64,000 nt of DNA from IMG/VR virus record IMGVR_UViG_3300032268_000986, positions 248,001 to 312,000 of that record. One strand, written 5' to 3'. Below are positions 34,122 through 63,859 of this stretch, piece after piece; positions within the stretch are counted from its first letter, which is position 1, and each line of letters starts with the position of its first letter. A program made the translations under genes and the position numbers. The notes beneath the pieces were generated by a model. The model did not search any database, was not told the DNA's origin, and saw only the letters and a list, made by a program, of their open reading frames with translations.

Positions 34122-34561
34122 TTGACATCTCGTCCCAATTGTCGATCGTGATCGTCCAGGTCTTTGGTAGAAACCACAGTCATCATGACATCCAGTTCGT
34201 CATCTCGATAAGTGGGATACAACTCCTGTAGACGCTTTCGTTTGGCACCGGCTCCGGCTTCTTTTTTCTTGGGCGCAACCCAGTTGTGCTTCATTGCCCC
34301 CAAGCCCGGGCTCACGGCAGTGGCACACAACCACTGCAATTTGGGGTGCCGGCCAATTGTGAAGAAGTGTTTGTTCAAGTAGTGGTTACAACTTTGCACA
34401 TAGTACTCTTGCAACTCCTGAGCACCGTCCACACAACTACCCCAACGGATCATGAGAAAAGTACTGAACTTCTTGAGCTCTTCTGTGGTAAGACTGTTGT
34501 AGAACTCTCGGTTCTTGACGTCCAGTTGACGCATCTCGTTGTGTATTGATAGCTTATCCAT
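34118..34561 (-). CDS. probable clamp-loader small subunit (T4 gp62-like); start probably MDKLS at 34561
   Basis: Size, position in the replication module, F.MIRW.S...N..LN.H...HPKLQW...W.APKK pattern. Confidence 0.55.
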   Translation of the reverse strand: MDKLSIHNEMRQLDVKNREFYNSLTTEELKKFSTFLMIRWGSCVDGAQELQEYYVQSCNHYLNKHFFTIGRHPKLQWLCATAVSPGLGAMKHNWVAPKKKEAGAGAKRKRLQELYPTYRDDELDVMMTVVSTKDLDDHDRQLGRDVK

Positions 34562-35612
34562 ACTTGAAAATTTTCCTATAGACCTGTTGTTGGACTGGCA
34601 AATGTTGAAACCATCCCTCACCCCGGGTGTGATCCATCATGAGCTGGCGTGCTGTGAACTTCCACCAGGCCTGAGTATTGTCCACTGTGCGCAGTACATC
34701 AATAGCTCGATCAATGTTGACATGCCGATGTGGTGCTGTTTCCAACTTGGCAATCAAATTGTCTCGAAATTCCCAGGGAATCAAGCCCAGTCCCTCTGCA
34801 CCATCAGGATTGGCCAATACTGGTTGGAACGCATGTTCCGTGACCTGTTGCTGTGAAAGATAGTCAAACAATTGATCTATCCACCAAACATTAATGGCAC
34901 TGATCACTGGTGCATAGGATAATTGTACATAAGATTGTGATTTACACCAAGCAATATTTTCTTCAATTTGACTCCATTTGGTGCCACTGCGAACTATTTC
35001 GGCAATCTCTCCCACGGCATCAATGCTGGCATTGACATTGATATACTTGAACTTGGACCAGTAGTCTTTCACGTGTTTGTTCTTGTAGCCCAACACAGTC
35101 ATATTGGTGCTGTACATCACACGAGGTTGCACCCGAGCTGCAATCAATTTTTCCAACAGCTGATAGTGCTGTGGATTCAGCAGTGGTTCACCGCCGGCAA
35201 AATACACCTGTTGACAATGACTCAAGTCAATGTCGCCCAATTCAACTTCTTCGTGTAAATGAATCACCTGTTGACCCAGTTCACTGGCCCAGCTGGTGCT
35301 GAATCCTGGACCACAACTGCGACATTTCAAATTGCAGAGATTGTTGTTTCTAAAATCCAAGAAGTGAACCTGCAAGTTGGTCAAGTCAGTGGGATAGTGC
35401 TGAAACATCTTACGCCAGCCTTCTCGCTCAGGTGGGCATGAGTTCATGCACTCCTGAGGAATTTCACCTCGCAAAAAAGCACCGCCTACTACGTCACGAA
35501 CCTGTTCAGGACTGTCAAAGTGATCGCCGCCCCAGCTGCAACAGGGTGTGAACTTGCCGCCAGGCATGTAGGTGACTGCGGTCCATGGAGCCTTGCAATA
35601 GATTTCACTCAT
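34554..35612 (-). CDS. radical SAM enzyme with N-terminal twitch-like Cys cluster
   Basis: CKAPW...PCC, CNLKCRSC, AGGEPL, YSTN.T, ASIDAVG..AEIVRSG. Confidence 0.9.
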   Translation of the reverse strand: MSEIYCKAPWTAVTYMPGGKFTPCCSWGGDHFDSPEQVRDVVGGAFLRGEIPQECMNSCPPEREGWRKMFQHYPTDLTNLQVHFLDFRNNNLCNLKCRSCGPGFSTSWASELGQQVIHLHEEVELGDIDLSHCQQVYFAGGEPLLNPQHYQLLEKLIAARVQPRVMYSTNMTVLGYKNKHVKDYWSKFKYINVNASIDAVGEIAEIVRSGTKWSQIEENIAWCKSQSYVQLSYAPVISAINVWWIDQLFDYLSQQQVTEHAFQPVLANPDGAEGLGLIPWEFRDNLIAKLETAPHRHVNIDRAIDVLRTVDNTQAWWKFTARQLMMDHTRGEGWFQHLPVQQQVYRKIFKYG

Positions 35613-48960: not shown

Positions 48961-50015
48961 TATTCTTCCTCAACGTCAACAACAGGTGTGGCATCCTTTT
49001 GATTGCCAAAATCTTTCATCACAGTGTCAAGACAGCCGTCAGTATTGGCTTCCCATGCCTTGCGAAACTTCTTGATGATCTCGCCATCGCTTGTGGTAAA
49101 CACTAGACTGTTGCCTTCGCGTTTGAGCAGGCCTTTTTTCTCAATCAAGTCCACAAGACCTGAGTAAGGGCTCATGCCTGTTTCATAAGGAATCTTGACT
49201 TGCACTCCCTCGAACGGCTTGGCATAGCGTGTTTTCATTACTTTACAGCCAGCACGAATACCAGTTACATCTGAAATCTTGTTGCCGTCTTCGTCCTCTT
49301 TGAGTTTCATCTTCTTCATGGCCACCACAATTGAGCTGGCGTAAATGAAACCTTGACCACCTGAAATCTTGTCGTCTGGATCAAACATGTCTTGACTGGC
49401 GTATGTGTGATTGGTACAAACCAGGCCCACGTTGTAACTACCAAACATGTTGACACAGTTACGCACCAAGGCGGTAAGAGCTTTGGGCTTGCGACCTAGG
49501 TCACCTTTCATTTCGCCTGCATCAAATTGATTCACATCAGTGGGTGTCAGCAACATGCCCAGGCTGTCAATTACAAACATGACCTTGGGTCGCTCGGCAG
49601 GATCAAGAGCTTTGTAGTCGCTCATGAATGTAGAGATAGTTTTAGCTACATCGTCAATCATGGCCATTGACAATTTGAGTAACTTGCTGTCACTGGTATC
49701 AACTCCCAGGGCCTTGAGCCAGTCTTCGTCCAAGGCATTTTCGCTGTCAATCAACACTACAAAGATGCCTTGCTGTTGTGCATGTTTGATAATGTTGCCA
49801 CTACAGATGTAACTTTTACCTGCGCCCGAGTCACCGGCAAACACCGTGACCTTGCCCAAGGGGATACCTCGATCAAAGTCTCCTGAGATCAAGTAGTTCA
49901 AAGCATAGTTGCCTGTGGAGATCCAGTCTGTGGGATCATTGAATCCAATCGACAATCCGTCGATACTTTTTGTAATTTCCTTGCGGAATTTTGATACGTC
50001 AAATGGTTTAGCCAT
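48960..50015 (-). CDS. uvsX: RecA/UvsX recombinase
   Basis: STGNYALN, GDSGAGKS, IDSEN, VIDSLG, TNHTY, SGG.G..YASS. Confidence 0.95.
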   Translation of the reverse strand: MAKPFDVSKFRKEITKSIDGLSIGFNDPTDWISTGNYALNYLISGDFDRGIPLGKVTVFAGDSGAGKSYICSGNIIKHAQQQGIFVVLIDSENALDEDWLKALGVDTSDSKLLKLSMAMIDDVAKTISTFMSDYKALDPAERPKVMFVIDSLGMLLTPTDVNQFDAGEMKGDLGRKPKALTALVRNCVNMFGSYNVGLVCTNHTYASQDMFDPDDKISGGQGFIYASSIVVAMKKMKLKEDEDGNKISDVTGIRAGCKVMKTRYAKPFEGVQVKIPYETGMSPYSGLVDLIEKKGLLKREGNSLVFTTSDGEIIKKFRKAWEANTDGCLDTVMKDFGNQKDATPVVDVEEE

Positions 50016-51606
50016 GGTATTTTCCTTTGTAAATGATATCTGCTATTTCTGGATGTGTCTGATTAAATTTTTGATCTCTTATATTGTCTAATTTTAGCAT
50101 GAATTTTGATAGTTCGTCAATTAAATCTGGTGAATATTTGTTCTGTTTGAGTAAGGCAATGATAGGAAATACATTGTGTTTTATTAACTTGTCATGATCA
50201 ATTTGAGATAATTTGTCAATGACTTGAGTTGTTAATTCCGTATTCATTGCTGTTATGCTTAAAAATTTTGGGTGTTCTAATAAATTAAAATTTAATTTGT
50301 TAAATTTTTTTGTATCTACCCAGGTTATTAACTGATCAAGATAATAAACATTTTGAACATTAACTGTGGTAAAAATACTAAGGATCATGTTTGGTAGTTT
50401 GTTTTCTAAGAATTTATCTAAGTTAACATTGACCAAATCCCATTTCCCCCCGCGCTCTAATTCAAACCGTGTACCTATGTTATCTATGCTAAATGCAATG
50501 TCAACTTGTCGGAACAACTTCCATTTTTCAAACAAATGTGCTGGGTACACAGACCCGTTTGAATTGTAATGTAGTCTAATTTTGTGTGCCAGGTCATGCT
50601 CTATTAGATAATCTAAAAATGTCTCTTGTTGCTTGATGAGAAACGGCTCGCCACCATAAAAATCAATGTTAACCAGCTGATTTCCCAACGTGTTAAACAT
50701 TTTCCAAATTTGATCATTTTTGACCCACTGTCCTTTTCGATTGAGATTTTTGAGATCAATAATAGAGTCAAAGTGTCGTGCCTGTTCTTCTGCTATTTTT
50801 GAACTAGCGTCTGAATTGCATATTCTGCATGCAAAATTACAAAGATTTCCTAGTTTTAAATCTAGACTAACTAAATTTTCAAGTTGATCTTGCTCTATGT
50901 CTAAACATTGCGCATCAATCCCAAGACAATCACTGAACCACTGTCGATTTGATTGCCCTTTATGTTGTTCTTTCATCCAGCAGCTCGAACATCCGGCAGG
51001 ACGATCCCCGTCGAGAAATTGTGTTCTTAACCTTGTTAAATAGTCACTGTGGTAGACTTCTTCAATACTATTAGTATTGATATTGTAGGGAACATTGTTG
51101 GAATCCGTTATTGATTCTTTATACACACAACAAGGTCTAAATTCGCCTTGTGACGAAATTTCTAAATGTGCCCATGGACTAAAACAAAATGTGTCAGGCA
51201 AGGTAATTGCAGGATTCTTAACAACCTCAGGTGCGACGTCACTAAATTTTATGTCCAGTGTTGAAAAAATACAATCATCTGTTGAATAGTTGCGTCTAAC
51301 TAATTCAAGATGATCTTGATCAATGTCAGAACCAGAACTACAAATTAAAATAAAAAAGTTAGATATATCTAACAGCGTTGCGCTTTTTTGTATGTGTATT
51401 AAAGTTTCAACTGATATCAAATTTCTACTGTACAGAACTATTCGACTATGATCACTGTATTCTGGTTGGTACCATTGTTTAAATAATTTATACAGTGTTT
51501 TTCGAGGTTGACCAAGTAATTGATCTAGGTCGATTACACCAACTATTTGATAGTTGTAATGTTGTTCTAAATACTGTTTTAGGTCAGTTGAGGGTATCGG
51601 TGTCAT
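50008..51606 (-). CDS. radical SAM enzyme with twitch-like Cys cluster and extra N-terminal domain; AT-rich gene
   Basis: CFSPW.HL.I...G..RPCC, C.SCW, CNFACRIC, YGGEPF, YNSNG, FSIDNIG. Confidence 0.9.
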   Translation of the reverse strand: MTPIPSTDLKQYLEQHYNYQIVGVIDLDQLLGQPRKTLYKLFKQWYQPEYSDHSRIVLYSRNLISVETLIHIQKSATLLDISNFFILICSSGSDIDQDHLELVRRNYSTDDCIFSTLDIKFSDVAPEVVKNPAITLPDTFCFSPWAHLEISSQGEFRPCCVYKESITDSNNVPYNINTNSIEEVYHSDYLTRLRTQFLDGDRPAGCSSCWMKEQHKGQSNRQWFSDCLGIDAQCLDIEQDQLENLVSLDLKLGNLCNFACRICNSDASSKIAEEQARHFDSIIDLKNLNRKGQWVKNDQIWKMFNTLGNQLVNIDFYGGEPFLIKQQETFLDYLIEHDLAHKIRLHYNSNGSVYPAHLFEKWKLFRQVDIAFSIDNIGTRFELERGGKWDLVNVNLDKFLENKLPNMILSIFTTVNVQNVYYLDQLITWVDTKKFNKLNFNLLEHPKFLSITAMNTELTTQVIDKLSQIDHDKLIKHNVFPIIALLKQNKYSPDLIDELSKFMLKLDNIRDQKFNQTHPEIADIIYKGKYHG

Positions 51607-54575: not shown

Positions 54576-54581
54576 TATTTA
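54576..54581 (-). promoter_or_regulatory. TAAATA late-promoter-like motif, 7 nt before ATG
   Basis: TAAATA tactacc ATG. Confidence 0.55.
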
Positions 54582-56168
54582 GCGCATTATGGAAATAAAG
54601 GGCATGGGTTCAACTATGACATCGCCATGATCTTTGAGGTGACTGTCCAATTCAGAGTGATAGGTTTGCAACAACATCAACATGCGCACTGCCAACAAAC
54701 TGCTCATCACAAGATCATCAGTTTCCCCGGGTTTGGCAGAGTAACTGGTGCCAGCTGCCACAAAGGTCTTGAGCTCAGAAATCAAGGGCTTGCTGTACAG
54801 TTTCATGCGGCCCGATTCCACAAGGATTTTGAACTTGTTGCAGGCTGTGATCTTGGCCTTGTGTGTGGTGTTGAAACCTTTGCGGAATCTGCGACCTGTG
54901 GTGCCTGTCACAGAGTTGTCGCTGAGAAAGTACCCAGGAATATTTTCTTCACCGTATTCTGCAATAGAGATCAAGGCTGCTTCTCCCAGGGTGTTGTTTT
55001 CCACCGAGTAATACACGCTCTTGTCGTTCTTGGTCACTGCTTTTATTTCCTTGATGATGTCCACCAGTATGCGAACTTGACTGGGCACATCAGTTTTGTT
55101 GTGGCGCCACTCGGCTACTTGTTCTGTGGTGTCGGCCTCAAAAACCTGTATAGCTGCTGGATCACCTCCGGTGCCCAGGCTGGGATCCAAGGCAACAATG
55201 TACATTTTACCTGGGTTGATTGGCTTGTACCAGCGCACTTGACCGGTACGGTGTATGGGGTCAACTCCTTCTATCTCCAGCAGTTTGATAGGGGATATCA
55301 AAGTTTCATCGTTGATAACAAACTCACAGTCCATTTCTCTGCGGAAACGTTCTTCACCCAGCTGAGCTCGTTGTTCATTGGCCCAGGCATCATCACGATC
55401 TGGGTGTTCTCTCCAATAGGCGCGGTACGCACGGAAGCCATTGATGCCTAGACCGTCGGGTCTGGGATTGCCGTACTCGTCTTCAATCTTGTTGGCACCT
55501 TTCCAGATATAAGCAAATTGATCTTCGTCTGAGTTGGGAGTTGATGTGATAATGGCTTTACCACCAGTGCTCAATGTGGGAGTGATGGAAGTCCAAAACT
55601 CCTTGGCAATTGTGGGTCGCACAAACGCAAACTCATCAAGATACAGCAAGGTGATACTCATACCACGGCCGGTGTTTTCAGTTGTGGTCTGACTTACAAT
55701 ACGGCTACCGTTGTCAAACTCTAGGCTTCCTTTGTTGTAGCTGGTGGCGCCGGCACGAATGTGATTGGGGCACAACTCATAAGCATATCTTATGCGTTGC
55801 ATGATTTCCTGGGCGCCTAGATACTTGTGTGCAGCAATCAAGATTGTGCTGTCGGGAATAAACATGGCATACCACAGCAGGTATCCAGCTGCTGATGTTG
55901 ATTTGCCTGTTTGTCGAGGCATGAGACTGATACTAAATCTATTGGTGTGATAGTTGTCAATCAGCTTTTTTTGATAGTCATAAGCATGGTACAACATCTT
56001 GCCACGTGTGGGATGCTGAATGTGAAAAAAGTTGTCCATGAAGTATGCCGGGCCCGTGACAGGGTCGGCGCACAGTGCAAATTCTTGTAGTTCTTGATTG
56101 GTGTAGGTCTCTCGTCTGTGTGGCGATTTGACCAGTACAGTGTCCAGTGTTGGTTTCATTCCAATCAT
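54579..56168 (-). CDS. terL: terminase large subunit (T4 gp17-like)
   Basis: PRQTGKST, RGMSITLLYLDEFAFV, IITSTPN, ALDPSLG.G.D, DDLVM. Confidence 0.96.
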   Translation of the reverse strand: MIGMKPTLDTVLVKSPHRRETYTNQELQEFALCADPVTGPAYFMDNFFHIQHPTRGKMLYHAYDYQKKLIDNYHTNRFSISLMPRQTGKSTSAAGYLLWYAMFIPDSTILIAAHKYLGAQEIMQRIRYAYELCPNHIRAGATSYNKGSLEFDNGSRIVSQTTTENTGRGMSITLLYLDEFAFVRPTIAKEFWTSITPTLSTGGKAIITSTPNSDEDQFAYIWKGANKIEDEYGNPRPDGLGINGFRAYRAYWREHPDRDDAWANEQRAQLGEERFRREMDCEFVINDETLISPIKLLEIEGVDPIHRTGQVRWYKPINPGKMYIVALDPSLGTGGDPAAIQVFEADTTEQVAEWRHNKTDVPSQVRILVDIIKEIKAVTKNDKSVYYSVENNTLGEAALISIAEYGEENIPGYFLSDNSVTGTTGRRFRKGFNTTHKAKITACNKFKILVESGRMKLYSKPLISELKTFVAAGTSYSAKPGETDDLVMSSLLAVRMLMLLQTYHSELDSHLKDHGDVIVEPMPFISIMR

Positions 56169-56749
56169 GTGATATTGGGCTTTAATAATGTGTACGAGGT
56201 CAGTCTAAATGTGCCCACAGGCACAGGGTTGAGCATGCCATGAAACAAGCCAGTGGTTTCAGCATTGTTTAAAGGGTTGGTCATTATGTATCCTGTGTTG
56301 GCCTGAGATTCAAACTGTTTTCTCACTTGCTGGCCTTGACTGTCATGATAAAAACAGGTGCCCTGTTCAGAATGGCCTATCCAATACATCTGCATGGCGC
56401 CCGGCAACGCACCGTCGGTATGTATAGGGCAATCAAACCCTTCATGATCCAACCAAAACACAGTATGTCCATGATGATGACTGAGTAAAGGCATGTTGAT
56501 CATGGTGCTGATACGAAACCATATCTGTTGTTGATTGGTTGTCCATTGGTCTCCCCAGGACAGATCATGAAGTTCAATTCTGCGTCGAGGCCAGGTTTCT
56601 TGGCAAGGTTGAGTACTGTGTGGGACATTCAACCAGTCCGTGGCAAGTATTTGTTGCAAAAGATCTGAGGGCACCAGGTCAGTTACCTGGAACAGATTTG
56701 GAACACTGTCAACTGCGGTTATTTGCATAGGTGTGATAACTCTGGCCAT
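56165..56749 (-). CDS. 2OG-Fe(II) oxygenase-like protein
   Basis: HTD...FHG...R facial triad and 2OG-binding Arg pattern. Confidence 0.7.
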   Translation of the reverse strand: MARVITPMQITAVDSVPNLFQVTDLVPSDLLQQILATDWLNVPHSTQPCQETWPRRRIELHDLSWGDQWTTNQQQIWFRISTMINMPLLSHHHGHTVFWLDHEGFDCPIHTDGALPGAMQMYWIGHSEQGTCFYHDSQGQQVRKQFESQANTGYIMTNPLNNAETTGLFHGMLNPVPVGTFRLTSYTLLKPNIT

Positions 56750-57861
56750 AGCTTTTCAAACTCACCTGCTTTGTCAGGATGGAACACAGTTTCGTTGTCC
56801 ACTATGTGTTGTTTGAATTGTTTTTCAATTCCAGGTCGGGCCTGTTTTATGTCACGATACATATTTAATGAGTTATCAAAAAATGCACGTTCAGCCGGAG
56901 TGGAGATCCCTAGATTGTAAAAACGTTCTATCTCAGAAATTGCTGCGGCTGCAACTTCTGGACCATGCAGAAATGGATCAAGATACTCTGGTTGAAACAG
57001 GTTCTGCCACAACACTGTGGTACCAGTTTGCTCGGCAAATTCGCGCAGTTCACAAATGCGTGTGGCATTGTAGATGTTGTACACTGCATGTATGCCACCC
57101 CACTGTCCTTGCGTTTTCATCAAGTCCTTGATCAGTTGCAAGTTGTGTTGAATTGTGCTCCAGGTGGCACCATGTCGCACATATTCAAGGCGATCACCGG
57201 TGTTATCAAAGCTCATGCTCCAGCCCACTTTGTTTCTAGTTGATAACTTTTGAAATATCTTGTTTGATTCTAGATCAACATTCAAGTTTGTAATCAGTGT
57301 GACAATTGCGTCCTTGGGTATGACATCCAACAAACGATTGTTTTCTGGCAACAACAAGGGCTCGCCGCCTACCAGCGCAACTTCATGTATGTGTTCGTAG
57401 TGCTGTTCAATGAAGTCACACACTGAATCGTAGTAGGGTCTTGCACCACTCTTGAATGGAATACCTTTGATGCCGGCCCATTTTGAGCTGCATGATTCAC
57501 CGCAGTAGTTACAACTCAGGTTACAAGTGGTATTCCAACGCACATCCACAATCACAGGATAGTGATATTTGTCTCCTGCTGTGGCATAATCAAAGTTGGG
57601 ATTTACATTGTTGTGCCAGGCCCGTTCAGAATCAGCACCAAATCGTTCTGCTCGCACACAATTGCTGCAATACTCATGTGGGATTCCTTGTGCAAGACTA
57701 TTGCGTATCTTGCCCATGAGATCAGAGTTTAAAATCTCAACAATGCTCTGTGAGTTCAAGTTGCCCAGCATGTTGGGATTGCCGGCACAGCAGGTTTTTA
57801 CATCGCCCCTGGGATTGATATGTAGGCCGCGCCAGGGAGCGGCACAATAGAAATTTGTCAT
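56719..57861 (-). CDS. radical SAM enzyme with N-terminal twitch-like Cys cluster
   Basis: CAAPW.GLHI.P.G.V.TCC, CSNC, CNLSCNYC, VGGEPL, ITN, SFDN.G.R.EYVRHG. Confidence 0.92.
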   Translation of the reverse strand: MTNFYCAAPWRGLHINPRGDVKTCCAGNPNMLGNLNSQSIVEILNSDLMGKIRNSLAQGIPHEYCSNCVRAERFGADSERAWHNNVNPNFDYATAGDKYHYPVIVDVRWNTTCNLSCNYCGESCSSKWAGIKGIPFKSGARPYYDSVCDFIEQHYEHIHEVALVGGEPLLLPENNRLLDVIPKDAIVTLITNLNVDLESNKIFQKLSTRNKVGWSMSFDNTGDRLEYVRHGATWSTIQHNLQLIKDLMKTQGQWGGIHAVYNIYNATRICELREFAEQTGTTVLWQNLFQPEYLDPFLHGPEVAAAAISEIERFYNLGISTPAERAFFDNSLNMYRDIKQARPGIEKQFKQHIVDNETVFHPDKAGEFEKLWPELSHLCK

Positions 57862-57879: not shown

Positions 57880-58317
57880 TTAGTTGCACCAAGATGTTTT
57901 GGCTTCGCCGTAGTATTCGCGGGCAAACCCGTTGGCAATCAGTTGCTGACGTAGGCTAACACCGTTTAACAGCACATCTCCCAGCACACGGCCACCATAC
58001 TTGTCCCAGTCCATGAGCACAATCTGTCGCTTTTGACTGGCAGCAATCAGTTGCTTGGTAAATGCTGTGGCAGCTTCACCACGTTGAGCTTCACTGGCAC
58101 ATTGAGCACGATGGCCCTTTTCAGGAGTGTCAACTCCGAACACACGGATACTGAGTTCCTGTTTGAGTGGTGCAGGCAACCATGTGGCTTGTATGCCCAC
58201 TGTGTCACCGTCTATGACTCTGGTGATTACGGCGTCATATGTGACACCGGGTTTTTGTCGGGGTTGTGCTAATACTAACACAGGAACGACGAGTAAGAGT
58301 AGGATGAGTTTTTTCAT
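57880..58317 (-). CDS. thermonuclease (SNase) family protein with signal peptide
   Basis: RVIDGDT, IR..GVDTPE, DKYGGRVL, L...G.AR.Y; N-terminal MKKLILLLLVVPVLVLA. Confidence 0.9.
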   Translation of the reverse strand: MKKLILLLLVVPVLVLAQPRQKPGVTYDAVITRVIDGDTVGIQATWLPAPLKQELSIRVFGVDTPEKGHRAQCASEAQRGEAATAFTKQLIAASQKRQIVLMDWDKYGGRVLGDVLLNGVSLRQQLIANGFAREYYGEAKTSWCN

Positions 58318-58973: not shown

Positions 58974-59354
58974 TTAATAGCCATTAAAGGGTCGGACTGG
59001 ACTCTGTGTGTCCACAAACGTGGGTTCTGTGCTGTCAGGGGTTGATACTAGTTGTTTGCCGTCCGGAGTGTTGGTCATGGTCAGTGCAGTATCAATTATT
59101 TGTGCGATTCCTGCGTTCATGCCAGCAATGACCCCGTGTTCGCCAAATGCAGTTTCACCGCTCCATGCTGGCAGGTTGTCGGTTAATCCATCTGTGCCTG
59201 CATCACTTCTGGCTCGTGCCATGGCCACACTGAATCTATAGTTGTTGTAGGGATCAGCAGCACTGAGCCCGGGAATCACATAGGTATGACGCATGGGATT
59301 GGCCTGCTCAGGTGGCAGGGATTTATGCTCGGTTACAAATTCACGGGCTCGCAT
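58974..59354 (-). CDS. putative head-internal protein, MRAREFVTE paralog 2
   Basis: N-terminus resembles T4 capsid-targeting sequence; paralog of 59354..59719. Confidence 0.6.
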   Translation of the reverse strand: MRAREFVTEHKSLPPEQANPMRHTYVIPGLSAADPYNNYRFSVAMARARSDAGTDGLTDNLPAWSGETAFGEHGVIAGMNAGIAQIIDTALTMTNTPDGKQLVSTPDSTEPTFVDTQSPVRPFNGY

Positions 59355-59719
59355 CAGTAACCCCCAAACGCCTTGACTGGACTTTGTTTGCCAGTGCTTG
59401 CTAGTTCTTCTGAATCCATGTCACCTGAATTCAAATCAGTATACTCAGCACCAGCTGCCTTGAATGCTTGTTTCAGCATTTCGTGTTCAATTTCTGTGTA
59501 AGGATAGGCACCACGTTTTTTTCCTATCCAACTTTTTTCATCCATGTCCAACACATCGCCTGATCCGTCGGCCATGGCCACTGCCATCATCACACGATTG
59601 AGAGTGTAGTCACTGTTGGTGCGTTCGCCATCGCTAAACGTGGTCAAGCCCACCGTGGCGGCTTGACGACGGTTGCCTATAGTACCATCGCGCTCAGTGA
59701 TAAACTCTCGTGCTCGCAT
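59354..59719 (-). CDS. putative head-internal protein, MRAREFITE paralog 1
   Basis: Shares MRAREF.TE start and QSPV..F.GY end with neighbour. Confidence 0.6.
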   Translation of the reverse strand: MRAREFITERDGTIGNRRQAATVGLTTFSDGERTNSDYTLNRVMMAVAMADGSGDVLDMDEKSWIGKKRGAYPYTEIEHEMLKQAFKAAGAEYTDLNSGDMDSEELASTGKQSPVKAFGGY

Positions 59720-60186: not shown

Positions 60187-62289
60187 TCAAACTCCGTGTT
60201 TGCCTTTGTACTCTTTCCAAAGACCAGCCACGCTCTCACGTACTTTTTCCATGTCGCCGTCGCCGTCTAGGTCAGCTTCTTTCTTGCCATCGGCACGGGC
60301 CTTGGCCAGATTGCCAGTGAACTTGTTGCCTTCTTCGGTCTTTTCTTCGTCAACTTCTTTTTTCTTGACGCCGGCCATTTCCATCATGCGCTTGATGGCA
60401 TCTTCTTCTTCGGCAGCATAGCTTTGCTGACGTTCTTCTTGACTGGCCAGCACAGGTACTGTGCTCTGACCAGTTGACTTGGGACCGTTCAAGCCACCTG
60501 AGTATTCAAAGTTGTTGTCAGCCTGTTCAGTCTTGGTGGGATAGTCAGGAGAATTTTCATCCACCATGTCTGAACAACCACATGGGGCTTGATTGCAAGT
60601 TGGACAGGCTTCTTCACCGTGATCATGACCATGATCTTGTCCGCCACCAATACCGGCCATTTTGAGGATTTCTGCCAACTTGGCTGCATCTTCTTCAGTG
60701 GCTGTGACTGTTAGAGAACTGCCACCTTCGGTTGAGCTGCTCATGTTGATGCTCATGCTTTCAGCAATCATGCTTTCTAGTTCACGATTCATTGAATCAT
60801 AGATGCCCTTGCCAAAACTCATGCTGCCCTTGCCACCAGCAGCTGGAGCCACGCTGCCTGCTGTGGTGCTGGATTCGTCAACTTCTTTTTCTTTCTTCTT
60901 GCCTTCGGATTTTTTCTTTTCAGGCAAGCCCTTGTGCTTGGTGCTGGCAAAATCTTCAGCATCTTTTTTCTTCATGGTCTTGGCAACTTTGGCAACTTCT
61001 TTGCTGGGGGCTTTTTCGCCCTTTTGTGTTGCATGTACCATGCCCATGAACTTCTGCTGCTTCTTGCTTACTGCTTTTTCATCAAGCTCTTGTTCACCGT
61101 CTTTGCTGATTTTGTAGCCGGCTTTTTTCAGCAACTTCATAGCTGCTTTAACGTCGTCACCTTCTTCTTTGAGATTGTATTCTGGTCCAGAAGCAGTACC
61201 GCCCACACGTTGTGCCATTGGTCGCATACCAGCTCTATTAATCATCTGAGTTTGCTTGAGTCTTTGTGGATTTTTTTGTGCAAAGGCTAGCAGTTGACGA
61301 GCTGTGTTTTCATCGTAAGTTTCGACACTACCTGCGTCAGGATCAACTTCGGCGCCATTCATAGCAGCAATCTGATCAATCAATGTGTCATCTAAGATAG
61401 CAAAAGTTTGTTTCATTCCGCCGCTTTCTTTAGTCATTAACTTTGATCGGCCGCTTGGTCCCTTGGCACCGGTGCGATTGCTTGTGCCTTTGGGTCGGCC
61501 ACGACTGCGTTTTTCTCCGGCTGCTGGAGTTTCATCACCTGTGTTGGTTTCACCAGTCTTGGCATCGTAGGCACGTGTGTGACGAATACCAGTTGCTGTT
61601 TTTTCAATTTCGCCCTTGCTGGTCTTGACACGATCGCCCACACGCATGCCGCTGTGGTCGCCGGCACGGCGCTTGACGTCGGCCATCATGTCGTCCCAAC
61701 CTTCGTCCATTTCTGAGTTACGACCTCGGCCGCCGCCCAGGGCTGACTTCATGGCTTCTGCAGCCACATCGCCCAGCATCTCGTCAACTTCTTTCTTGGC
61801 GCCGGCAATTTTGTCGGCAAAAGTGATCTTGTCTTTTGGTTCGGCTAGTGCAGCAAAGCTCTTGGCCTTGGCCGGTGACATTTTTTCTTTGACTACCTTG
61901 GGATTTGGTTCACGGCCAGGCTTCATGCCAGTTTGTGGTACGCCCATTCTTTTCTGCAGGTCACGCATCATGTCTGCATCGCTGCCATGTCCCAGTGTGT
62001 CCAGGGCCTTGGAGCCCAGCTTTTTGGCAGCACCACCCACTTTCTTGACAATGTTGCCCAGGCCTTCGTCAACTTCGGTGTTGTCATATTTGTCATATTT
62101 GGCACGTACTGGGTCAAGGTCTTTGCCTTCACGTCCGGCCTTGGCCAAGGCTTCCATGCCTTCTTTGCCGTATTTTTCATAGCCCTTGGCAGCACGGCTC
62201 ATGTCACGCTCATTGAGCTGACCATGTGTTTTGCTTGGTGTGGCGCGGATCTCGTCCAGCTTTTTGTTTAAGTCGTAAAAAAATGTCAT
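60187..62289 (-). CDS. highly charged polyprotein-like head-internal protein with DUF3008-like module
   Basis: About 12 (V/L/M)xE sites; AVSKKQQKFMGMV...DFASTKHKGLPE module. Confidence 0.65.
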   Translation of the reverse strand: MTFFYDLNKKLDEIRATPSKTHGQLNERDMSRAAKGYEKYGKEGMEALAKAGREGKDLDPVRAKYDKYDNTEVDEGLGNIVKKVGGAAKKLGSKALDTLGHGSDADMMRDLQKRMGVPQTGMKPGREPNPKVVKEKMSPAKAKSFAALAEPKDKITFADKIAGAKKEVDEMLGDVAAEAMKSALGGGRGRNSEMDEGWDDMMADVKRRAGDHSGMRVGDRVKTSKGEIEKTATGIRHTRAYDAKTGETNTGDETPAAGEKRSRGRPKGTSNRTGAKGPSGRSKLMTKESGGMKQTFAILDDTLIDQIAAMNGAEVDPDAGSVETYDENTARQLLAFAQKNPQRLKQTQMINRAGMRPMAQRVGGTASGPEYNLKEEGDDVKAAMKLLKKAGYKISKDGEQELDEKAVSKKQQKFMGMVHATQKGEKAPSKEVAKVAKTMKKKDAEDFASTKHKGLPEKKKSEGKKKEKEVDESSTTAGSVAPAAGGKGSMSFGKGIYDSMNRELESMIAESMSINMSSSTEGGSSLTVTATEEDAAKLAEILKMAGIGGGQDHGHDHGEEACPTCNQAPCGCSDMVDENSPDYPTKTEQADNNFEYSGGLNGPKSTGQSTVPVLASQEERQQSYAAEEEDAIKRMMEMAGVKKKEVDEEKTEEGNKFTGNLAKARADGKKEADLDGDGDMEKVRESVAGLWKEYKGKHGV

Positions 62290-62294
62290 TTGAT

Positions 62295-62903
62295 TTATCC
62301 TCTTGGGTGTGCGCCTGTAGTAGGCTTTGGCGGACGCTTGACCTTGCTGAACGGGCTGTTGTTGCCCATTGGCAGATCATTTGTGGTTTTTGCCGGAGGT
62401 GTCTTGCCGCCAGCCACTGTGAAATCACTACGGTATGCATTTTTCAGCACAACATGATTGTATGGATCAGCTGAGTAATCTTTCTTCAATGCACGTTGCT
62501 CGGCATCGTCGGCAGGATAATCAGTGTCTTTCAACAGATCTTTGTTTTGATCTGTGATCTTTTCACTTTCTTGACGTAGACTTTCATCATGAGCACGAGT
62601 GCCCATGACAATACGATTTGGATCCATGCCTAGAATCTGTGCCAACTGTTTGATCTGTGGCTCGATTGCAGGGTAACGGAAGTCTACGTCAATAATGGTA
62701 ACAGGCTCGTTTTCAAAGGCCGGAAACTCTGGAATGCTTTTACGCACCGGAGTTGTCTTGGGGTCAGTCATCTTGGCGATGTCAAACTGAGCCAGTCGGG
62801 CTTTGAGCTGACGTACAAAGTCAGCTGGAGCGTCACCAACAATTTTAATGCGATATGTGTATACACGTTCGCTTTCAGCAAGATATTGTGCAAATGGTCT
62901 CAT
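62295..62903 (-). CDS. putative head protein (MRPFAQYLAE-S...)
   Basis: Capsid-targeting-like N-terminus; TAAATA at 62921..62926. Confidence 0.6.
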   Translation of the reverse strand: MRPFAQYLAESERVYTYRIKIVGDAPADFVRQLKARLAQFDIAKMTDPKTTPVRKSIPEFPAFENEPVTIIDVDFRYPAIEPQIKQLAQILGMDPNRIVMGTRAHDESLRQESEKITDQNKDLLKDTDYPADDAEQRALKKDYSADPYNHVVLKNAYRSDFTVAGGKTPPAKTTNDLPMGNNSPFSKVKRPPKPTTGAHPRG

Positions 62904-62923: not shown

Positions 62924-63412
62924 TTATTCTTTTTTGTCGTTTTGATCCACAGGAGGGCGCAAACGTGCCAGTAGATCATTACGACTAAGCACCACACTGG
63001 TGCCAGTTTGTGACACAGTTGCTTCAGGCGGTGTGGCTTGGTCTAGACGTGCTTTTTTCAGCTGCAAATCAATCATTTTGAGTTTTTTGTCTAGCTTGGC
63101 TGTTTTGGCTGTGATTGCATGTCCCAGCATGTTCGAAGCCACACTGAAGATATCACTGGCAAATCTTGAATCAACTTGCATGCCAAGATCCATGAGATCT
63201 CGATAGCTTTCGGTTGCCAGGCCAGCAAGTTCGTCCATTTCAGTGTCGGTTGCATCAAGGCCATTGACCGCAGGCAGTGCATTGTCAATTTTGTCAATGG
63301 CTTGATCAATGGCCTGAATCTGTTCACGCTGTTCTTCCACAGCAACAGGCAGATCTGTGTCAGGTGCAGCACCTGGGGGTAAATTAAACAGTTCTTCGAG
63401 TTTGCGAGTCAT
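62924..63412 (-). CDS. probable terminase small subunit (gp16-like)
   Basis: Helical ~160 aa, SR..DIFSVA..ML......, C-terminal V.LSRNDLL; TAAATA 4 nt before ATG. Confidence 0.55.
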   Translation of the reverse strand: MTRKLEELFNLPPGAAPDTDLPVAVEEQREQIQAIDQAIDKIDNALPAVNGLDATDTEMDELAGLATESYRDLMDLGMQVDSRFASDIFSVASNMLGHAITAKTAKLDKKLKMIDLQLKKARLDQATPPEATVSQTGTSVVLSRNDLLARLRPPVDQNDKKE

Positions 63413-63427
63413 GCCATATTTATGGGC

Positions 63428-63859
63428 TTACTGACGGCCGTTGTGAAACATGTCGGTCTCGGTGATGACTCTAAACATCATGCCGTTGCGGCGTGCCCAC
63501 TTGGTGGCAGCATCCCATTTGGCATAGTTGATGGCTATCACAGCACGATCACGACTGCTCATCTTGCTCTCTATAACACTTTGTTTTTTGGGTTTGATTT
63601 CAATCAGCTCGGCTCGCACAGTGTTGTCTCTGGTGCGATATGTGATCAAAAAATCCGGGATGTAGTTGGCTGTTTTGCCTGTGAGTGGGTGGCGATAGGG
63701 TATGGCTATGCTTTCACTGGCCCACTGCAAGATATGATCATTGGTGTCACAAAATCGCATGAAGCTGTGTTCCCAGCCTGATCGATAGTGAGGTGCGCCG
63801 CGGCCCACATACTTGGCTGGATTGACAACTTGGTAGTCGCCTTGTGCCCACTTGGCCAT
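63428..63859 (-). CDS. head completion nuclease (T4 gp4-like, PD-(D/E)XK)
   Basis: YRSGWE..FM.FCD, WASE.I.IPY, YIPDF, IEIKP, NYAKW.AA. Confidence 0.88.
   Translation of the reverse strand: MAKWAQGDYQVVNPAKYVGRGAPHYRSGWEHSFMRFCDTNDHILQWASESIAIPYRHPLTGKTANYIPDFLITYRTRDNTVRAELIEIKPKKQSVIESKMSSRDRAVIAINYAKWDAATKWARRNGMMFRVITETDMFHNGRQ

What the first reader, a model, noticed from the sequence alone, without database searches (positions are those of the whole stretch)
60187..62289. 700-aa polyprotein punctuated by about 12 prohead-protease-type sites
Recurring EVDE-G, VVKE-K, EVDE-M, EMDE-G, MTKE-S, NLKE-E, ELDE-K, EVDE-S, MIAE-S, MVDE-N, EVDE-E and KVRE-S divide the protein into short, basic or charged modules, including a DUF3008-like unit. 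Established: T4 gp21 protease cleaves after Glu in (I/L)xE motifs. Inference: one gene yields a cocktail of small injected peptides (DNA-binding or anti-defence) or core/scaffold fragments.
Basis: partly seen in the sequence, partly recalled or inferred. Interest (0 to 1): 0.6.

Follow-up and report, generated by a model that had tools for sequence, protein, structure and literature searches.

The report
Likely protease-cut phage head polyprotein
A 700-residue "beads-on-a-string" protein of an uncultured freshwater jumbo phage is probably loaded into the capsid and cut by the T4-type head protease at about ten conserved glutamate sites into small basic and acidic peptides; the indirect support is good, but no cleavage has been observed.

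Summary
Seven of them form one recurrent motif, [E/M]-[V/L/M]-D-E. E[LIVM]DE occurs 6 times against 0.08 expected, and this protein is the strongest outlier among 325 ORFs of the genome. The other five sites are at chance level by count, though three are conserved.

The phage is a roughly 350-kb T4-related jumbo phage, nearest to Pseudomonas phage PA5oct. Its contig breaks just where the portal-protease-capsid block lies. All five long relatives that carry this gene encode a T4 gp21-type (Peptidase_S77) protease.

Several lines point to multi-site processing in the prohead:
- The sites lie in predicted disordered linkers.
- P3 and P1 are conserved while P2 varies.
- Modules move between proteins together with flanking h-x-E sites.
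- The DUF3008 unit begins exactly at such a site, or at a start codon, in cultured cyanophages, one of which carries it in virions.
- Neighbouring genes have T4-like capsid-targeting leaders.

Cleavage, packaging and injection are all untested. I rate it a new variant of a known kind, with moderate interest.

The parts
60187..62289 (-). Whole ORF, 700 aa (P0001), 75.4 kDa, rich in K/G/A/E/D. It is the candidate capsid-loaded polyprotein.
   Evidence: More than 3,371 metagenomic homologues of 512-959 aa.
62209..62289 (-). Residues 1-27: conserved leader MTFFYDLNKKL...QLNE|R. Probable propeptide or capsid-targeting leader, ending in an invariant L-N-E site.
   Evidence: QLNE is kept in 118 of 118 sequences. 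The leader is also kept on relatives with different downstream content, where it ends in QLTE, QITE or TILE. Helix 2-16 is followed by a low-pLDDT stretch at 22-26.
62065..62208 (-). Residues 28-75: module M1 (MSRAAKGYEKYGK...KYDKYD), a helical hairpin ending at EVDE75|G.
   Evidence: pLDDT 72-88. M1 is found in unrelated proteins (P0230, P0239, P0241, P0205), always with h-x-E 3-8 residues before and usually after it.
61885..62064 (-). Residues 76-135: basic module (net +6) ending at V/I-K-E135|K.
   Evidence: Site kept in 107 of 118 sequences; charge.
61780..61884 (-). Residues 136-170: nearly invariant unstructured block KSFAALAEPKDKITFADKIAGAKKEVDE170|M.
   Evidence: Invariant columns 145-170; EVDE kept in 118 of 118.
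61702..61779 (-). Residues 171-196: short helix module ending at EMDE196|G.
   Evidence: E196 is 93% conserved, 0.48 above its local background. It lies in the low-pLDDT linker 185-196.
61426..61701 (-). Residues 197-288: basic module (net +8) with a small beta-domain (220-248) and an AT-hook-like KRSRGRPKG (aa 259-267; window 61489-61515), ending at LMTKE288|S.
   Evidence: R263, G264, R265 and P266 are invariant. The beta strands have pLDDT 71-83.
61165..61425 (-). Residues 289-375: optional helical cassette (GGMKQTF...EYNLKE375|E), present in a minority of relatives. It is inserted exactly after the MT[KR]E site and brings its own L-K-E site.
   Evidence: Presence or absence does not track overall identity, and at least 4 alternative cassettes occupy this junction. 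No short stand-alone homologue was found.
61078..61164 (-). Residues 376-404: helix module (AAMKLLKKAGY) ending at ELDE404|K.
   Evidence: [VLI]-[DNES]-E|K is kept in 117 of 118 sequences with P3 and P2 varying. It lies in the low-pLDDT linker 398-406.
60874..61077 (-). Residues 405-472: DUF3008-like three-helix unit plus Lys-rich tail (net +10), ending at EVDE472|S.
   Evidence: It stands alone as a 69-aa virion protein in cyanophage S-SCSM1. In cultured cyanophages the unit starts either at Met or right after LHE|K or INE|K.
60556..60873 (-). Residues 473-578: acidic region with a small alpha-beta-beta-alpha domain (501-544), a conserved I-x-E510|S site, a His/Cys-rich stretch and MVDE578|N.
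   Evidence: The E578 site is only 56% conserved.
60346..60555 (-). Residues 579-648: conserved acidic, mostly disordered module with the helix EEDAIKRMMEMAGV, ending at EVDE648|E. This helix unit is tandemly multiplied in longer relatives.
60190..60345 (-). Residues 649-700: EEGNKFTG...DLDGDGD module with a Ca-loop-like DxDxDG. The V-x-E685|S site has an invariant P3 and P1 and a free P2, and is followed by a C-terminal amphipathic helix.
   Evidence: V116/E117 of 118, with P2 = R, D, Q or K. The EEGN.F.G module occurs at other positions in relatives.
62295..62903 (-). Upstream gene, 202 aa, 5 nt from the polyprotein start. Its leader MRPFAQYLAE|S resembles the T4 capsid-targeting sequence.
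   Evidence: Homologue of PA5oct gp282, a virion protein by ESI-MS/MS.
59354..59719 (-). Downstream small gene, 121 aa, with the leader MRAREFITE|R (internal-protein-like).
   Evidence: The orthologue in relative G005 begins MRAREFIAE|.
58974..59354 (-). Downstream small gene, 126 aa, with the leader MRAREFVTE|H (paralogous leader).
63428..63859 (-). T4 gp4-like head completion protein; a marker of the late structural operon.
   Evidence: phrog_218 at E = 7e-40, PF08722.
54579..56168 (-). Large terminase subunit (gp17-like); downstream anchor of the synteny block.
   Evidence: phrog_36964 at E = 1e-119; 52% identity to PA5oct TerL.

Best explanation
P0001 is a late, capsid-targeted cargo protein of a T4-related freshwater jumbo phage. 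It is made as one 75-kDa chain: a conserved 27-residue leader followed by about 12 small folded or helical units joined by disordered linkers.

Proposed mechanism, all inferred:
1. The leader, and perhaps the repeated amphipathic 'helix-AG[V/I]' elements, bring the chain into the prohead core.
2. The phage's gp21-type serine protease (Peptidase_S77) then cuts after Glu in h-x-E motifs. The preferred form here is E-[V/L/M]-D-E.
3. About 9-11 conserved positions are cut (E27, 75, 135, 170, 196, 404, 510, 648, 685, plus 288, 375, 472 and 578 in this phage).
4. This releases peptides of 2-10 kDa.
5. The strongly basic products stay with the packaged DNA, as T4 internal proteins do, and are candidates for co-injection. 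These are residues 76-135, the AT-hook module 197-288 and the DUF3008 unit 405-472.
6. The acidic pieces may leave the head or act as charge-neutralising pro-segments.

Shown here: the motif and its enrichment, its conservation pattern, its linker location, module mobility, a protease in the lineage, and the virion residence of analogues.

Inferred: packaging, cleavage and the fate of the fragments.
For: 1. Motif enrichment. E[LIVM]DE occurs 6 times against 0.08 expected, and the protein is the top outlier in the genome.
2. Conservation. P3 hydrophobic and P1 Glu are conserved while P2 and P4 vary, for example 404: V60/L43/I14 - D/N/E/S - E117, and 685: V116 - R/D/Q/K - E117. Glu at h-x-E is more conserved than other Glu (0.74 against 0.58, p = 0.011). 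It also exceeds its local background (p = 0.035).
3. Linker location. 6 of 7 E[VLM]DE sites lie in pLDDT<50 linkers of a beads-on-string model.
4. Protease in the lineage. All 5 long relatives carrying a homologue encode Peptidase_S77 above Pfam's cut-off (E = 1e-23 to 1e-25). The gene sits in a portal - acidic core protein - protease - scaffold - MCP block. That core protein itself has EELDE|SEEELDE|A. The MCP has YLKE|NASAG where PA5oct has FLVE|NASAG.
5. Synteny with PA5oct. The order gp4-like, 16x-aa gene, 200-aa protein, long acidic/charged protein, TerL is shared. PA5oct gp282 (homologous to the upstream gene) and gp281 (the positional counterpart of P0001) are virion proteins by ESI-MS/MS.
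6. Leaders on neighbouring genes. Three neighbours and one distant gene start with leaders like the T4 capsid-targeting sequence, ending in [LIV]-x-E. The T4 rules are taken from PMC9026906.
7. DUF3008 unit. It stands alone as a 69-aa MS-detected virion protein in S-SCSM1. In S-PM2, S-RIM32 and S-CAM22 it is preceded directly by LHE|K or INE|K. In S-SSM7, P-RSM6 and S-SCSM1 it starts at Met.
8. Module mobility. Module M1 moves between unrelated proteins with h-x-E on its flanks. An optional cassette sits exactly between two h-K-E sites, and at least 4 alternative cassettes occupy that junction.
Against: - There is no direct evidence of cleavage, packaging or injection for this protein or any homologue, and no cultured phage has a full-length homologue.
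- The window's own record has no protease, portal or MCP gene. I attribute this to a contig break, but the protease of this very phage is unseen.
- The classical T4 motif has L or I at P3. Here Val dominates and P2 = Asp is unusual, so specificity is assumed, not known.
- Generic h-x-E is only marginally enriched.
- Some listed sites are not conserved (E375, E472, E540, E578), and LAE150|P has Pro at P1'.
- Enrichment of h-x-E at insertion boundaries became marginal after removing the RMMEMAG repeats (p = 0.05 to 0.2).
- PA5oct gp281 is only a positional analogue; hhalign shows no significant similarity.
Confidence: 0.6

Rival explanations
1. The protein is a capsid-internal or ejection protein that loses at most its N-terminal leader and otherwise stays intact. 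In this reading it is a long, disordered 'beads-on-a-string' chain that can thread through the portal and tail. The E-[VLM]-D-E elements would be acidic linker or interaction motifs, for example binding the basic modules, the capsid inner surface or metal ions.
For: The model shows small domains joined by long disordered linkers, an architecture also suited to translocation as one chain. Acidic motifs alternate with very basic modules. A DxDxDG loop suggests metal binding. There is no evidence of fragments.
Against: This does not explain why P3 hydrophobic and P1 Glu are fixed while P2 and P4 drift. It does not explain why the DUF3008 unit begins at Met or directly after h-x-E in six cultured cyanophages. 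It does not explain why mobile module M1 carries such sites on both flanks in unrelated proteins.
Confidence: 0.2
2. The protein is an accessory prohead core or scaffold protein, functionally like T4 gp67/gp68/gp22. It is cut into many pieces that are expelled to make room for DNA. Its role would be assembly or head-size control, and nothing would be injected.
For: In T4 the core proteins, not the injected ones, are the substrates cut at many sites (PMC9026906). The acidic core protein beside the protease in relatives carries the same ELDE motif. The gene lies in the late structural operon.
Against: Relatives already have a dedicated gp22-like scaffold and an acidic core protein next to the protease. 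The module sequences are strongly conserved, including an invariant AT-hook RGRP and the DUF3008 unit, which is found in S-SCSM1 virions. That argues for products with a function of their own that remain in the virion. Length and cassette content vary widely (512-959 aa), which is unusual for a size-determining scaffold.
Confidence: 0.13
3. The protein is not a virion protein at all. The recurring motif would be a by-product of internal duplication or low-complexity composition in a charged, disordered protein of some other function.
For: Two motif flavours (KKEVDE three times, N[TS]E[VM]DEG twice) could reflect short duplications. No Pfam domain other than the DUF3008 was found.
Against: Shuffles that keep composition never reach the observed counts. 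Flanks beyond about 7 residues are unrelated. The gene is 5 nt downstream of a homologue of a PA5oct virion protein, inside the gp4-TerL block that is conserved in the clade.
Confidence: 0.05

Closest known systems
Substrates of the T4 gp21 prohead protease: internal proteins IPI-III and Alt (capsid-targeting leader removed), and core proteins gp22/gp67/gp68 (cut into several fragments)
   Same: The lineage encodes a gp21-family (Peptidase_S77) protease. The putative sites end in Glu with an aliphatic P3. There is a conserved N-terminal leader ending in such a site. The gene is a late structural gene. Neighbouring small genes have leaders resembling MKTYQEFIAE-type sequences. The products are basic and potentially DNA-associated.
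   Different: There is no sequence homology to any T4 substrate. A single chain combines a leader with about 12 modules, whereas T4 uses separate small genes. The preferred motif is E-[V/L/M]-D-E rather than L/I-x-E. The leader is 27 residues, not 10.
Inner-body and ejection proteins of phiKZ, 201phi2-1 and SPN3US, cleaved by gp175/gp245-type proteases at S/A-x-E
   Same: These are jumbo-phage head-internal proteins with several Glu-specific cleavage sites, some associated with DNA and ejected (PMC9026906).
   Different: The phage clade is different (T4-like replication and terminase, PA5oct-related), P3 is aliphatic rather than S, A or G, and there is no homology. [AGS]-x-E is not enriched here: 18 observed against 18.6 expected.
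Polyvalent proteins of phages and conjugative elements (Iyer et al. 2017, PMC5512222)
   Same: The concept is the same: one polypeptide carries many units, is delivered with the DNA and is released by proteolysis. Module content is combinatorial.
   Different: Polyvalent proteins are defined by enzymatic or anti-defence domains and usually an embedded MPTase peptidase. None is detectable here. Cutting would be in trans by the prohead protease, and the units are 3-10 kDa peptides.
PA5oct gp281 (YP_010678933), a virion 'structural protein' between gp282 and TerL
   Same: It occupies the same position in a conserved gene order, was detected in virions by ESI-MS/MS, is charged, has repeated helix-'LAG[V/I]' elements followed by h-x-E, and shows a modest excess of [LIVM][DE]E (6 against 2.0 expected, p = 0.01).
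   Different: Sequence and profile similarity are not significant. It is very acidic and lacks both the DUF3008 and AT-hook modules.
Cyanophage DUF3008-type small virion protein (S-SCSM1 gp279; S-PM2p146)
   Same: 65-76% identical to residues 405-456. It is carried in virions of a T4-like cyanophage. The same N-terminal boundary follows an h-x-E site.
   Different: It is a stand-alone gene of 69-91 aa, or an N-terminal unit of 540-990-aa proteins, rather than an internal module of a polyprotein.

Membership tests
Substrate of a T4 gp21-type (Peptidase_S77) prohead protease | The phage encodes an S77 protease | tested here: inconclusive
   There is no PF03420 match in the window's own 342,865-bp record, and no tblastn match to the PA5oct or relatives' protease. 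The record breaks exactly where the portal-protease-MCP block lies in the syntenic relative G005. 5 of 5 long relatives carrying a P0001 homologue have PF03420 above the cut-off.
Substrate of a T4 gp21-type (Peptidase_S77) prohead protease | Cleavage motifs: aliphatic residue - x - Glu, cut after Glu | tested here: met
   There are 17 [LIVM]xE sites, of which 9-11 are conserved with a free P2. The specific E[VLM]DE form is massively enriched. This shows that the motif is present, not that it is cut.
Substrate of a T4 gp21-type (Peptidase_S77) prohead protease | The protein is present in proheads and processed there | not testable with these tools
   Support is indirect only: the positional analogue and the neighbour's homologue are in PA5oct virions, and the DUF3008 unit is in S-SCSM1 virions.
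T4-type internal proteins with a capsid-targeting sequence | A short N-terminal leader that ends in the protease motif and is shared among cargo proteins | tested here: inconclusive
   P0001 has a conserved 27-residue leader ending in an invariant QLNE, but the leader is unique in the genome. The T4-like leader MRA[RQ]EF[VI]TE or M..FAQYLAE is on four other genes. Targeting itself is untested.
DUF3008 (Pfam PF11450) | A match at or above Pfam's gathering score (24 bits) | tested here: inconclusive
   P0001 scores 17.1 bits, E = 0.006, over the full-length profile 1-57, which is below the cut-off. Homologue P0118 reaches 24.6 bits. PHROG families containing the unit match at E = 2e-24 to 4e-19.
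Polyvalent proteins (Iyer et al. 2017) | Several recognisable enzymatic or anti-defence domains, commonly with an embedded MPTase peptidase | tested here: not met
   Pfam finds only DUF3008 in P0001 and in ten longer homologues. The PDB profile search and fold searches found nothing.
T4 gp22/gp67/gp68 prohead core or scaffold proteins | Homology to, or positional equivalence with, the genes beside the protease gene | tested here: not met
   Relatives have separate core (271-286 aa) and scaffold (362-364 aa) genes flanking the protease, about 36 kb from the P0001 homologue.
AT-hook DNA-binding motif | An R-G-R-P core flanked by basic residues | tested here: met
   KRSRGRPKG at residues 259-267, with R263, G264, R265 and P266 invariant in 83 sequences. 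DNA binding was not tested.

The most novel reading that the evidence does not exclude
A widespread lineage of freshwater jumbo phages packs a 'peptide cocktail' as one exchangeable-cassette polyprotein. The prohead protease dices it inside the capsid. The basic peptides (AT-hook, DUF3008 and others) travel with the DNA into the host, where they act as DNA-protecting or anti-defence factors. Cassettes bracketed by cleavage sites are swapped between phages as an arms-race mechanism. This would be a trans-cleaved, mini-domain counterpart of polyvalent proteins.
Probability: 0.25. Interest if true: 0.75.

Novelty: new variant of a known kind. Interest (0 to 1): 0.52.

Why it matters
Glu-specific prohead proteases and capsid-targeted cargo are textbook for T4 and phiKZ. 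In those phages the cargo is encoded as separate genes, or cleavage removes propeptides. Here one conserved gene, found in thousands of lake metagenome sequences, appears to encode about a dozen small units. Each unit is bracketed by protease motifs, and the cassette content is mobile.

If confirmed, this would show a compact way for large phages to load and diversify injected peptides. It would give a function and a mature N-terminus to the DUF3008 unit that is common in cyanophages. It would also provide a sequence rule (E-[VLM]-D-E in linkers) for predicting head cargo in uncultured T4-related jumbo phages. PA5oct and the T4-like cyanophages offer cultured systems in which to test it.

Tried and rejected
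- **Protease-substrate complex.** I predicted a complex of the relative's protease with residues 150-205. The tool gave no verdict, so it is evidence neither for nor against.
- **Fold searches.** Foldseek of the whole model against the PDB found nothing at E <= 0.001. The viral library returned only uncharacterised uncultured-phage proteins. The model is poor (pLDDT 55, pTM 0.26).
- **PDB sequence profile.** Nothing was found.
- **Homology to PA5oct gp281 and to S-SCSM1 gp280** (the charged virion protein beside the DUF3008 gene). Neither was significant.
- **h-x-E at insertion boundaries across the family.** The first test looked strong: 33 and 32 of 51 boundaries against 17 expected. It was driven by the RMMEMAG repeat, whose own 'MME' matches the pattern. 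After removing that repeat and de-duplicating, the result is marginal (p = 0.05 to 0.2).
- **Stand-alone origin of the optional cassette 289-375.** No short protein shares words with it.
- **Protease, portal and MCP in the own record.** All absent. A contig break explains this.
- **T4 late promoter TATAAATA and terminators near the gene.** Nothing above chance.
- **PA5oct paper.** It has no data on processing, and its supplements are not held.
- **Literature on DUF3008.** None was found.
- **Atlas look-alikes.** These were leads only, with scores below 0.9.
- **Not run.** I did not run the large exhaustive protein search, because the word search already gave thousands of relatives.
- **Housekeeping.** Only genetic code 11 was used.
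Full report
**What is at the coordinates.** Window 60187-62289 (minus strand) is a single ATG-initiated ORF of 700 codons (P0001). The protein is rich in K (12.6%), G, A, E and D, and has a mass of 75.4 kDa.

**Is the motif more than chance?**
- Shuffling the protein shows that the generic T4-style pattern [LIVM]-x-E is only weakly enriched: 17 against 10.9 expected, p about 0.03.
- [LIVM]DE occurs 8 times against 0.8 expected.
- E[LIVM]DE occurs 6 times against 0.08 expected, and no shuffle in 20,000 reaches this. EVDE is the commonest tetrapeptide.
- Among 325 non-overlapping ORFs of the whole 342,865-bp record, this protein holds 6 of the 16 E[LIVM]DE occurrences: 8.6 per 1000 aa against 0.15 genome-wide.
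- VVKE135, MTKE288, NLKE375, MIAE510 and KVRE685 are not above chance by count.

**The phage.** The window belongs to an IMG/VR virus record. It carries T4-type genes: a gp4-like head completion protein, TerL, gp32-like SSB, UvsX, gp41-like helicase and gp61-like primase. TerL is 52% identical to that of Pseudomonas jumbo phage PA5oct. The next nearest are Atu_ph07, Vibrio phage 2.275.O and the GAP32/PBECO4 group. Sequencing runs that hold the gene are mostly freshwater or lake metagenomes.

**The missing head block.**
- The record has no detectable portal, MCP or prohead protease.
- Synteny with a 341,990-bp relative (G005) explains this. There the order is an 1108-aa gene, portal, acidic core protein, protease, scaffold and MCP.
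- The 1108-aa gene matches the first 2.4 kb of our contig, and the gene after the MCP matches its last 1.7 kb.
- The head block therefore falls in the gap between the contig's end and its start. The start itself begins in a tandem repeat.
- All five long relatives that carry a P0001 homologue encode Peptidase_S77, the T4 gp21 family, above Pfam's cut-off at E = 1e-23 to 1e-25.
- The lineage thus has the protease. For this very phage that is an inference.

**Family.** The word search found more than 3,371 relatives at E <= 1e-3, with lengths of 512-959 aa. All are from metagenomes and unnamed. No cultured phage has a full-length homologue. Only residues about 400-456 match T4-like cyanophages.

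**Conservation of the candidate sites.** I used an alignment of 118 sequences and the 83-sequence alignment A1.
- The leader MTFFY.LN.KL and the site QLNE27|R are essentially invariant (118 of 118).
- Other sites kept in at least 85% of sequences are V-[DE]-E75|G, [VI]-K-E135|K and EVDE170|M.
- Also kept are [VLI]-[DNES]-E404|K, I-[ASK]-E510|[SG], V-[DE]-E648|[ED] and V-[RDQK]-E685|[SG].
- E196 is 97% conserved within a variable stretch.
- In each of these, P3 and P1 are fixed while P2 (and P4) drift.
- On a set thinned to 41 sequences, Glu at h-x-E is more conserved than the other 49 Glu (0.74 against 0.58, p = 0.011). It also stands above its local background (p = 0.035).
- Not conserved: E13, E375 (inside an optional cassette), E472, E540, and E578 (56%).
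- LAE150 is followed by an invariant Pro and is unlikely to be a site.

**Structure.** An AlphaFold2 model built with the family alignment has low overall confidence (pLDDT 55). It is informative as an architecture: short helices or mini-domains separated by low-confidence linkers.
- The mini-domains are the helical hairpin 27-65, the beta unit 220-248, the three-helix DUF3008 unit 409-450 and the alpha-beta-beta-alpha unit 501-544.
- Six of the seven E[VLM]DE sites, and QLNE27, fall in pLDDT<50 segments. The seventh (170) lies in coil.
- Cutting at the candidate sites would give 14 pieces of 15-92 aa.
- Strongly basic pieces: 76-135 (+6), 197-288 (+8, with an invariant AT-hook-like KRSRGRPKG) and 405-472 (+10).
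- Acidic pieces: 511-578 (-10) and 579-648 (-6).

**Modules move with their sites.**
- Searching residues 28-196 alone recovered short proteins on long contigs.
- Module M1 (MSRAAKGYEKYGK...KYDKYD) occurs in otherwise unrelated proteins (P0230, P0239, P0241, P0205).
- Over 121 distinct contexts, M1 is almost always preceded by h-x-E 4-6 residues upstream (LNE|RDM, LEE|EGM, VAE|GEQRM, LKE|GEKKTM, MTE|GERNM, VVE|GERTM and others).
- It is usually followed by V-[DENSTK]-E within 3-8 residues.
- The EEGN.F.G module is C-terminal in P0001 but lies in the N-terminal half in G005, P0199, P0202 and P0227.
- Residues 289-375 are an optional cassette whose presence does not track overall identity.
- The cassette lies exactly between LMT[KR]E| and its own NLKE|. 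At least four alternative cassettes occupy this junction.
- A global test of h-x-E at insertion boundaries was significant at first. It became marginal once the RMMEMAG repeats were excluded, so I do not lean on it.

**The DUF3008 unit.**
- In Pfam it scores below the gathering threshold (17.1 against 24 bits), but the match covers the whole profile. PHROGs match at E = 2e-24.
- In S-SCSM1 it is a 69-aa gene annotated as a virion protein.
- The S-SCSM1 paper states that its virion proteins were identified by mass spectrometry of CsCl-purified particles (PMC9602691).
- Across cultured T4-like cyanophages the unit begins either at the start codon (MPAVSKKQQ in S-SCSM1, S-SSM7 and P-RSM6) or directly after an h-x-E site.
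- The site forms are EEVLHE|KSVSKKQQ (S-PM2, S-RIM32) and GGINE|KAVSKKQQ (S-CAM22). P0001 has QELDE|KAVSKKQQ.
- This is the best single indication that the motif marks a real mature N-terminus.

**Neighbourhood.**
- The gene starts 5 nt after a 202-aa gene whose product is homologous to PA5oct gp282 (E = 5e-9) and begins MRPFAQYLAE|S.
- PA5oct has the same order: gp4-like, a 168-aa gene, gp282, gp281, TerL. Both gp282 and gp281 are marked ESI-MS/MS in the record.
- gp281 shows no significant similarity to P0001. It does share repeated helix-LAG[V/I] elements followed by h-x-E, and has a modest [LIVM][DE]E excess.
- Downstream of P0001 lie two small paralogous genes starting MRAREFITE| and MRAREFVTE|. 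A fourth gene elsewhere in the genome starts MRAQEFVTE|. Relative G005 has the same set plus MKTLKDYLTE|.
- These leaders resemble the 10-residue capsid-targeting sequences of the T4 internal proteins, which gp21 removes at L/I-x-E. T4 core proteins gp22, gp67 and gp68 are cut into several fragments, and the IPs and Alt are injected (review PMC9026906).
- In relatives, the acidic core protein beside the protease contains EELDE|SEEELDE|A. The MCP reads YLKE|NASAG where PA5oct reads FLVE|NASAG. From memory, this corresponds to the T4 gp23 maturation site; I did not test that here.

**Interpretation.**
- The most economical reading is a capsid-targeted cargo polyprotein that the S77 protease cuts at about 9-11 conserved Glu sites.
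- Val, Leu, Ile and Met all appear to be accepted at P3. The paralogous leaders differ only by I or V at that position.
- I put multi-site cleavage at about 0.6, head-internal location higher, and injection with DNA-binding roles for the basic pieces lower.
- An anti-defence role is pure speculation.

**Rival readings.**
- An intact disordered ejection protein that loses only its leader.
- An accessory core protein whose fragments are expelled.
- A non-virion protein with a duplicated linker motif.

**Comparison with what is known.**
- Mechanistically this is the T4 and phiKZ theme. It is not a member of any T4 substrate family by sequence.
- The phiKZ-type S/A/G-x-E motif is not enriched.
- It fails the domain definition of polyvalent proteins (PMC5512222).
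- Packing a leader plus about a dozen conserved, exchangeable mini-modules in one chain, each bracketed by protease motifs, is to my knowledge undescribed. A literature search for polyprotein plus prohead protease returned only the polyvalent-protein paper and an unrelated taxonomy paper.

**Expression.** A lake metatranscriptome run holds contigs 97-99% identical over parts of 59.5-61.0 kb. DNA carry-over in that library cannot be excluded, so this does not count as proof of transcription.

Noticed in passing
window 59354-59719 (-), 58974-59354 (-), 62295-62903 (-); genome G000:C1:179021-179653 (-): Four genes begin with leaders that resemble the T4 internal-protein capsid-targeting sequence and end in [LIV]-x-E: MRAREFITE, MRAREFVTE, MRPFAQYLAE and MRAQEFVTE. 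They are likely a set of capsid-loaded internal proteins. The same leaders occur in relative G005.
   Followed up: partly
genome G000:C1 bases 1-2400 and 340371-342865 (outside the window): The record, rated 99% complete by CheckV, starts in a tandem repeat inside a truncated gene of about 1100 aa. It lacks portal, core protein, protease, scaffold and MCP. By synteny with G005 these lie in the gap between the contig's end and its start.
   Followed up: yes
genome G000:C1:162359-163918 (-), locus L096: A 519-aa protein has a cytidylyltransferase/NMNAT-like N-terminus (PF01467), the second-highest density of [LIVM]DE motifs in the genome, and a C-terminal WSQKYKSSINC...GFSQRAHC element. That element is also seen at the start of P0241, a DUF6321 protein that carries module M1. 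Cyanophage S-SCSM1 has a virion NMNAT two genes upstream of its DUF3008 gene. This may be another protease-processed cargo protein.
   Followed up: partly
window 50008-51606 (-), 56719-57861 (-), 34554-35612 (-): Three radical-SAM domain proteins lie in one 64-kb window. One of them is inserted between the internal-protein-like genes and TerL.
   Followed up: no
window 62924-63412 (-): A 162-aa gene lies between the gp4-like gene and the leader-bearing 202-aa gene (phrog_16202, function unknown). Its position and size suggest a gp16-like small terminase. If so, the cargo genes sit between TerS and TerL, as in PA5oct (gp283-gp280).
   Followed up: no
P0001 residues 44-55, 382-394, 536-549, 631-643 (window about 60361-62160): An amphipathic helix ending in AG[R/Y/I/V] recurs (EALAKAGR, LLKKAGY, ILKMAGI, MMEMAGV). 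The RMMEMAG unit is tandemly multiplied in longer relatives, and similar LRLAGV, SKLAGI and LKNAGL elements occur in PA5oct gp281. It may be a core- or capsid-binding element.
   Followed up: partly
loci L099, L100, L101 (cyanophages S-SSM7, S-CAM22, P-RSM6): In these cultured cyanophages the DUF3008 unit is the N-terminal module of 540-990-aa proteins rather than a stand-alone gene. The S-SSM7 gene just upstream begins MKNFQEFQEA, which is very like the T4 capsid-targeting sequence.
   Followed up: partly
window 57880-58317 (-): A 145-aa protein with a signal-peptide-like N-terminus and a nuclease match (phrog_452) lies between the cargo genes and TerL. It is 90% identical in relative G005.
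   Followed up: no
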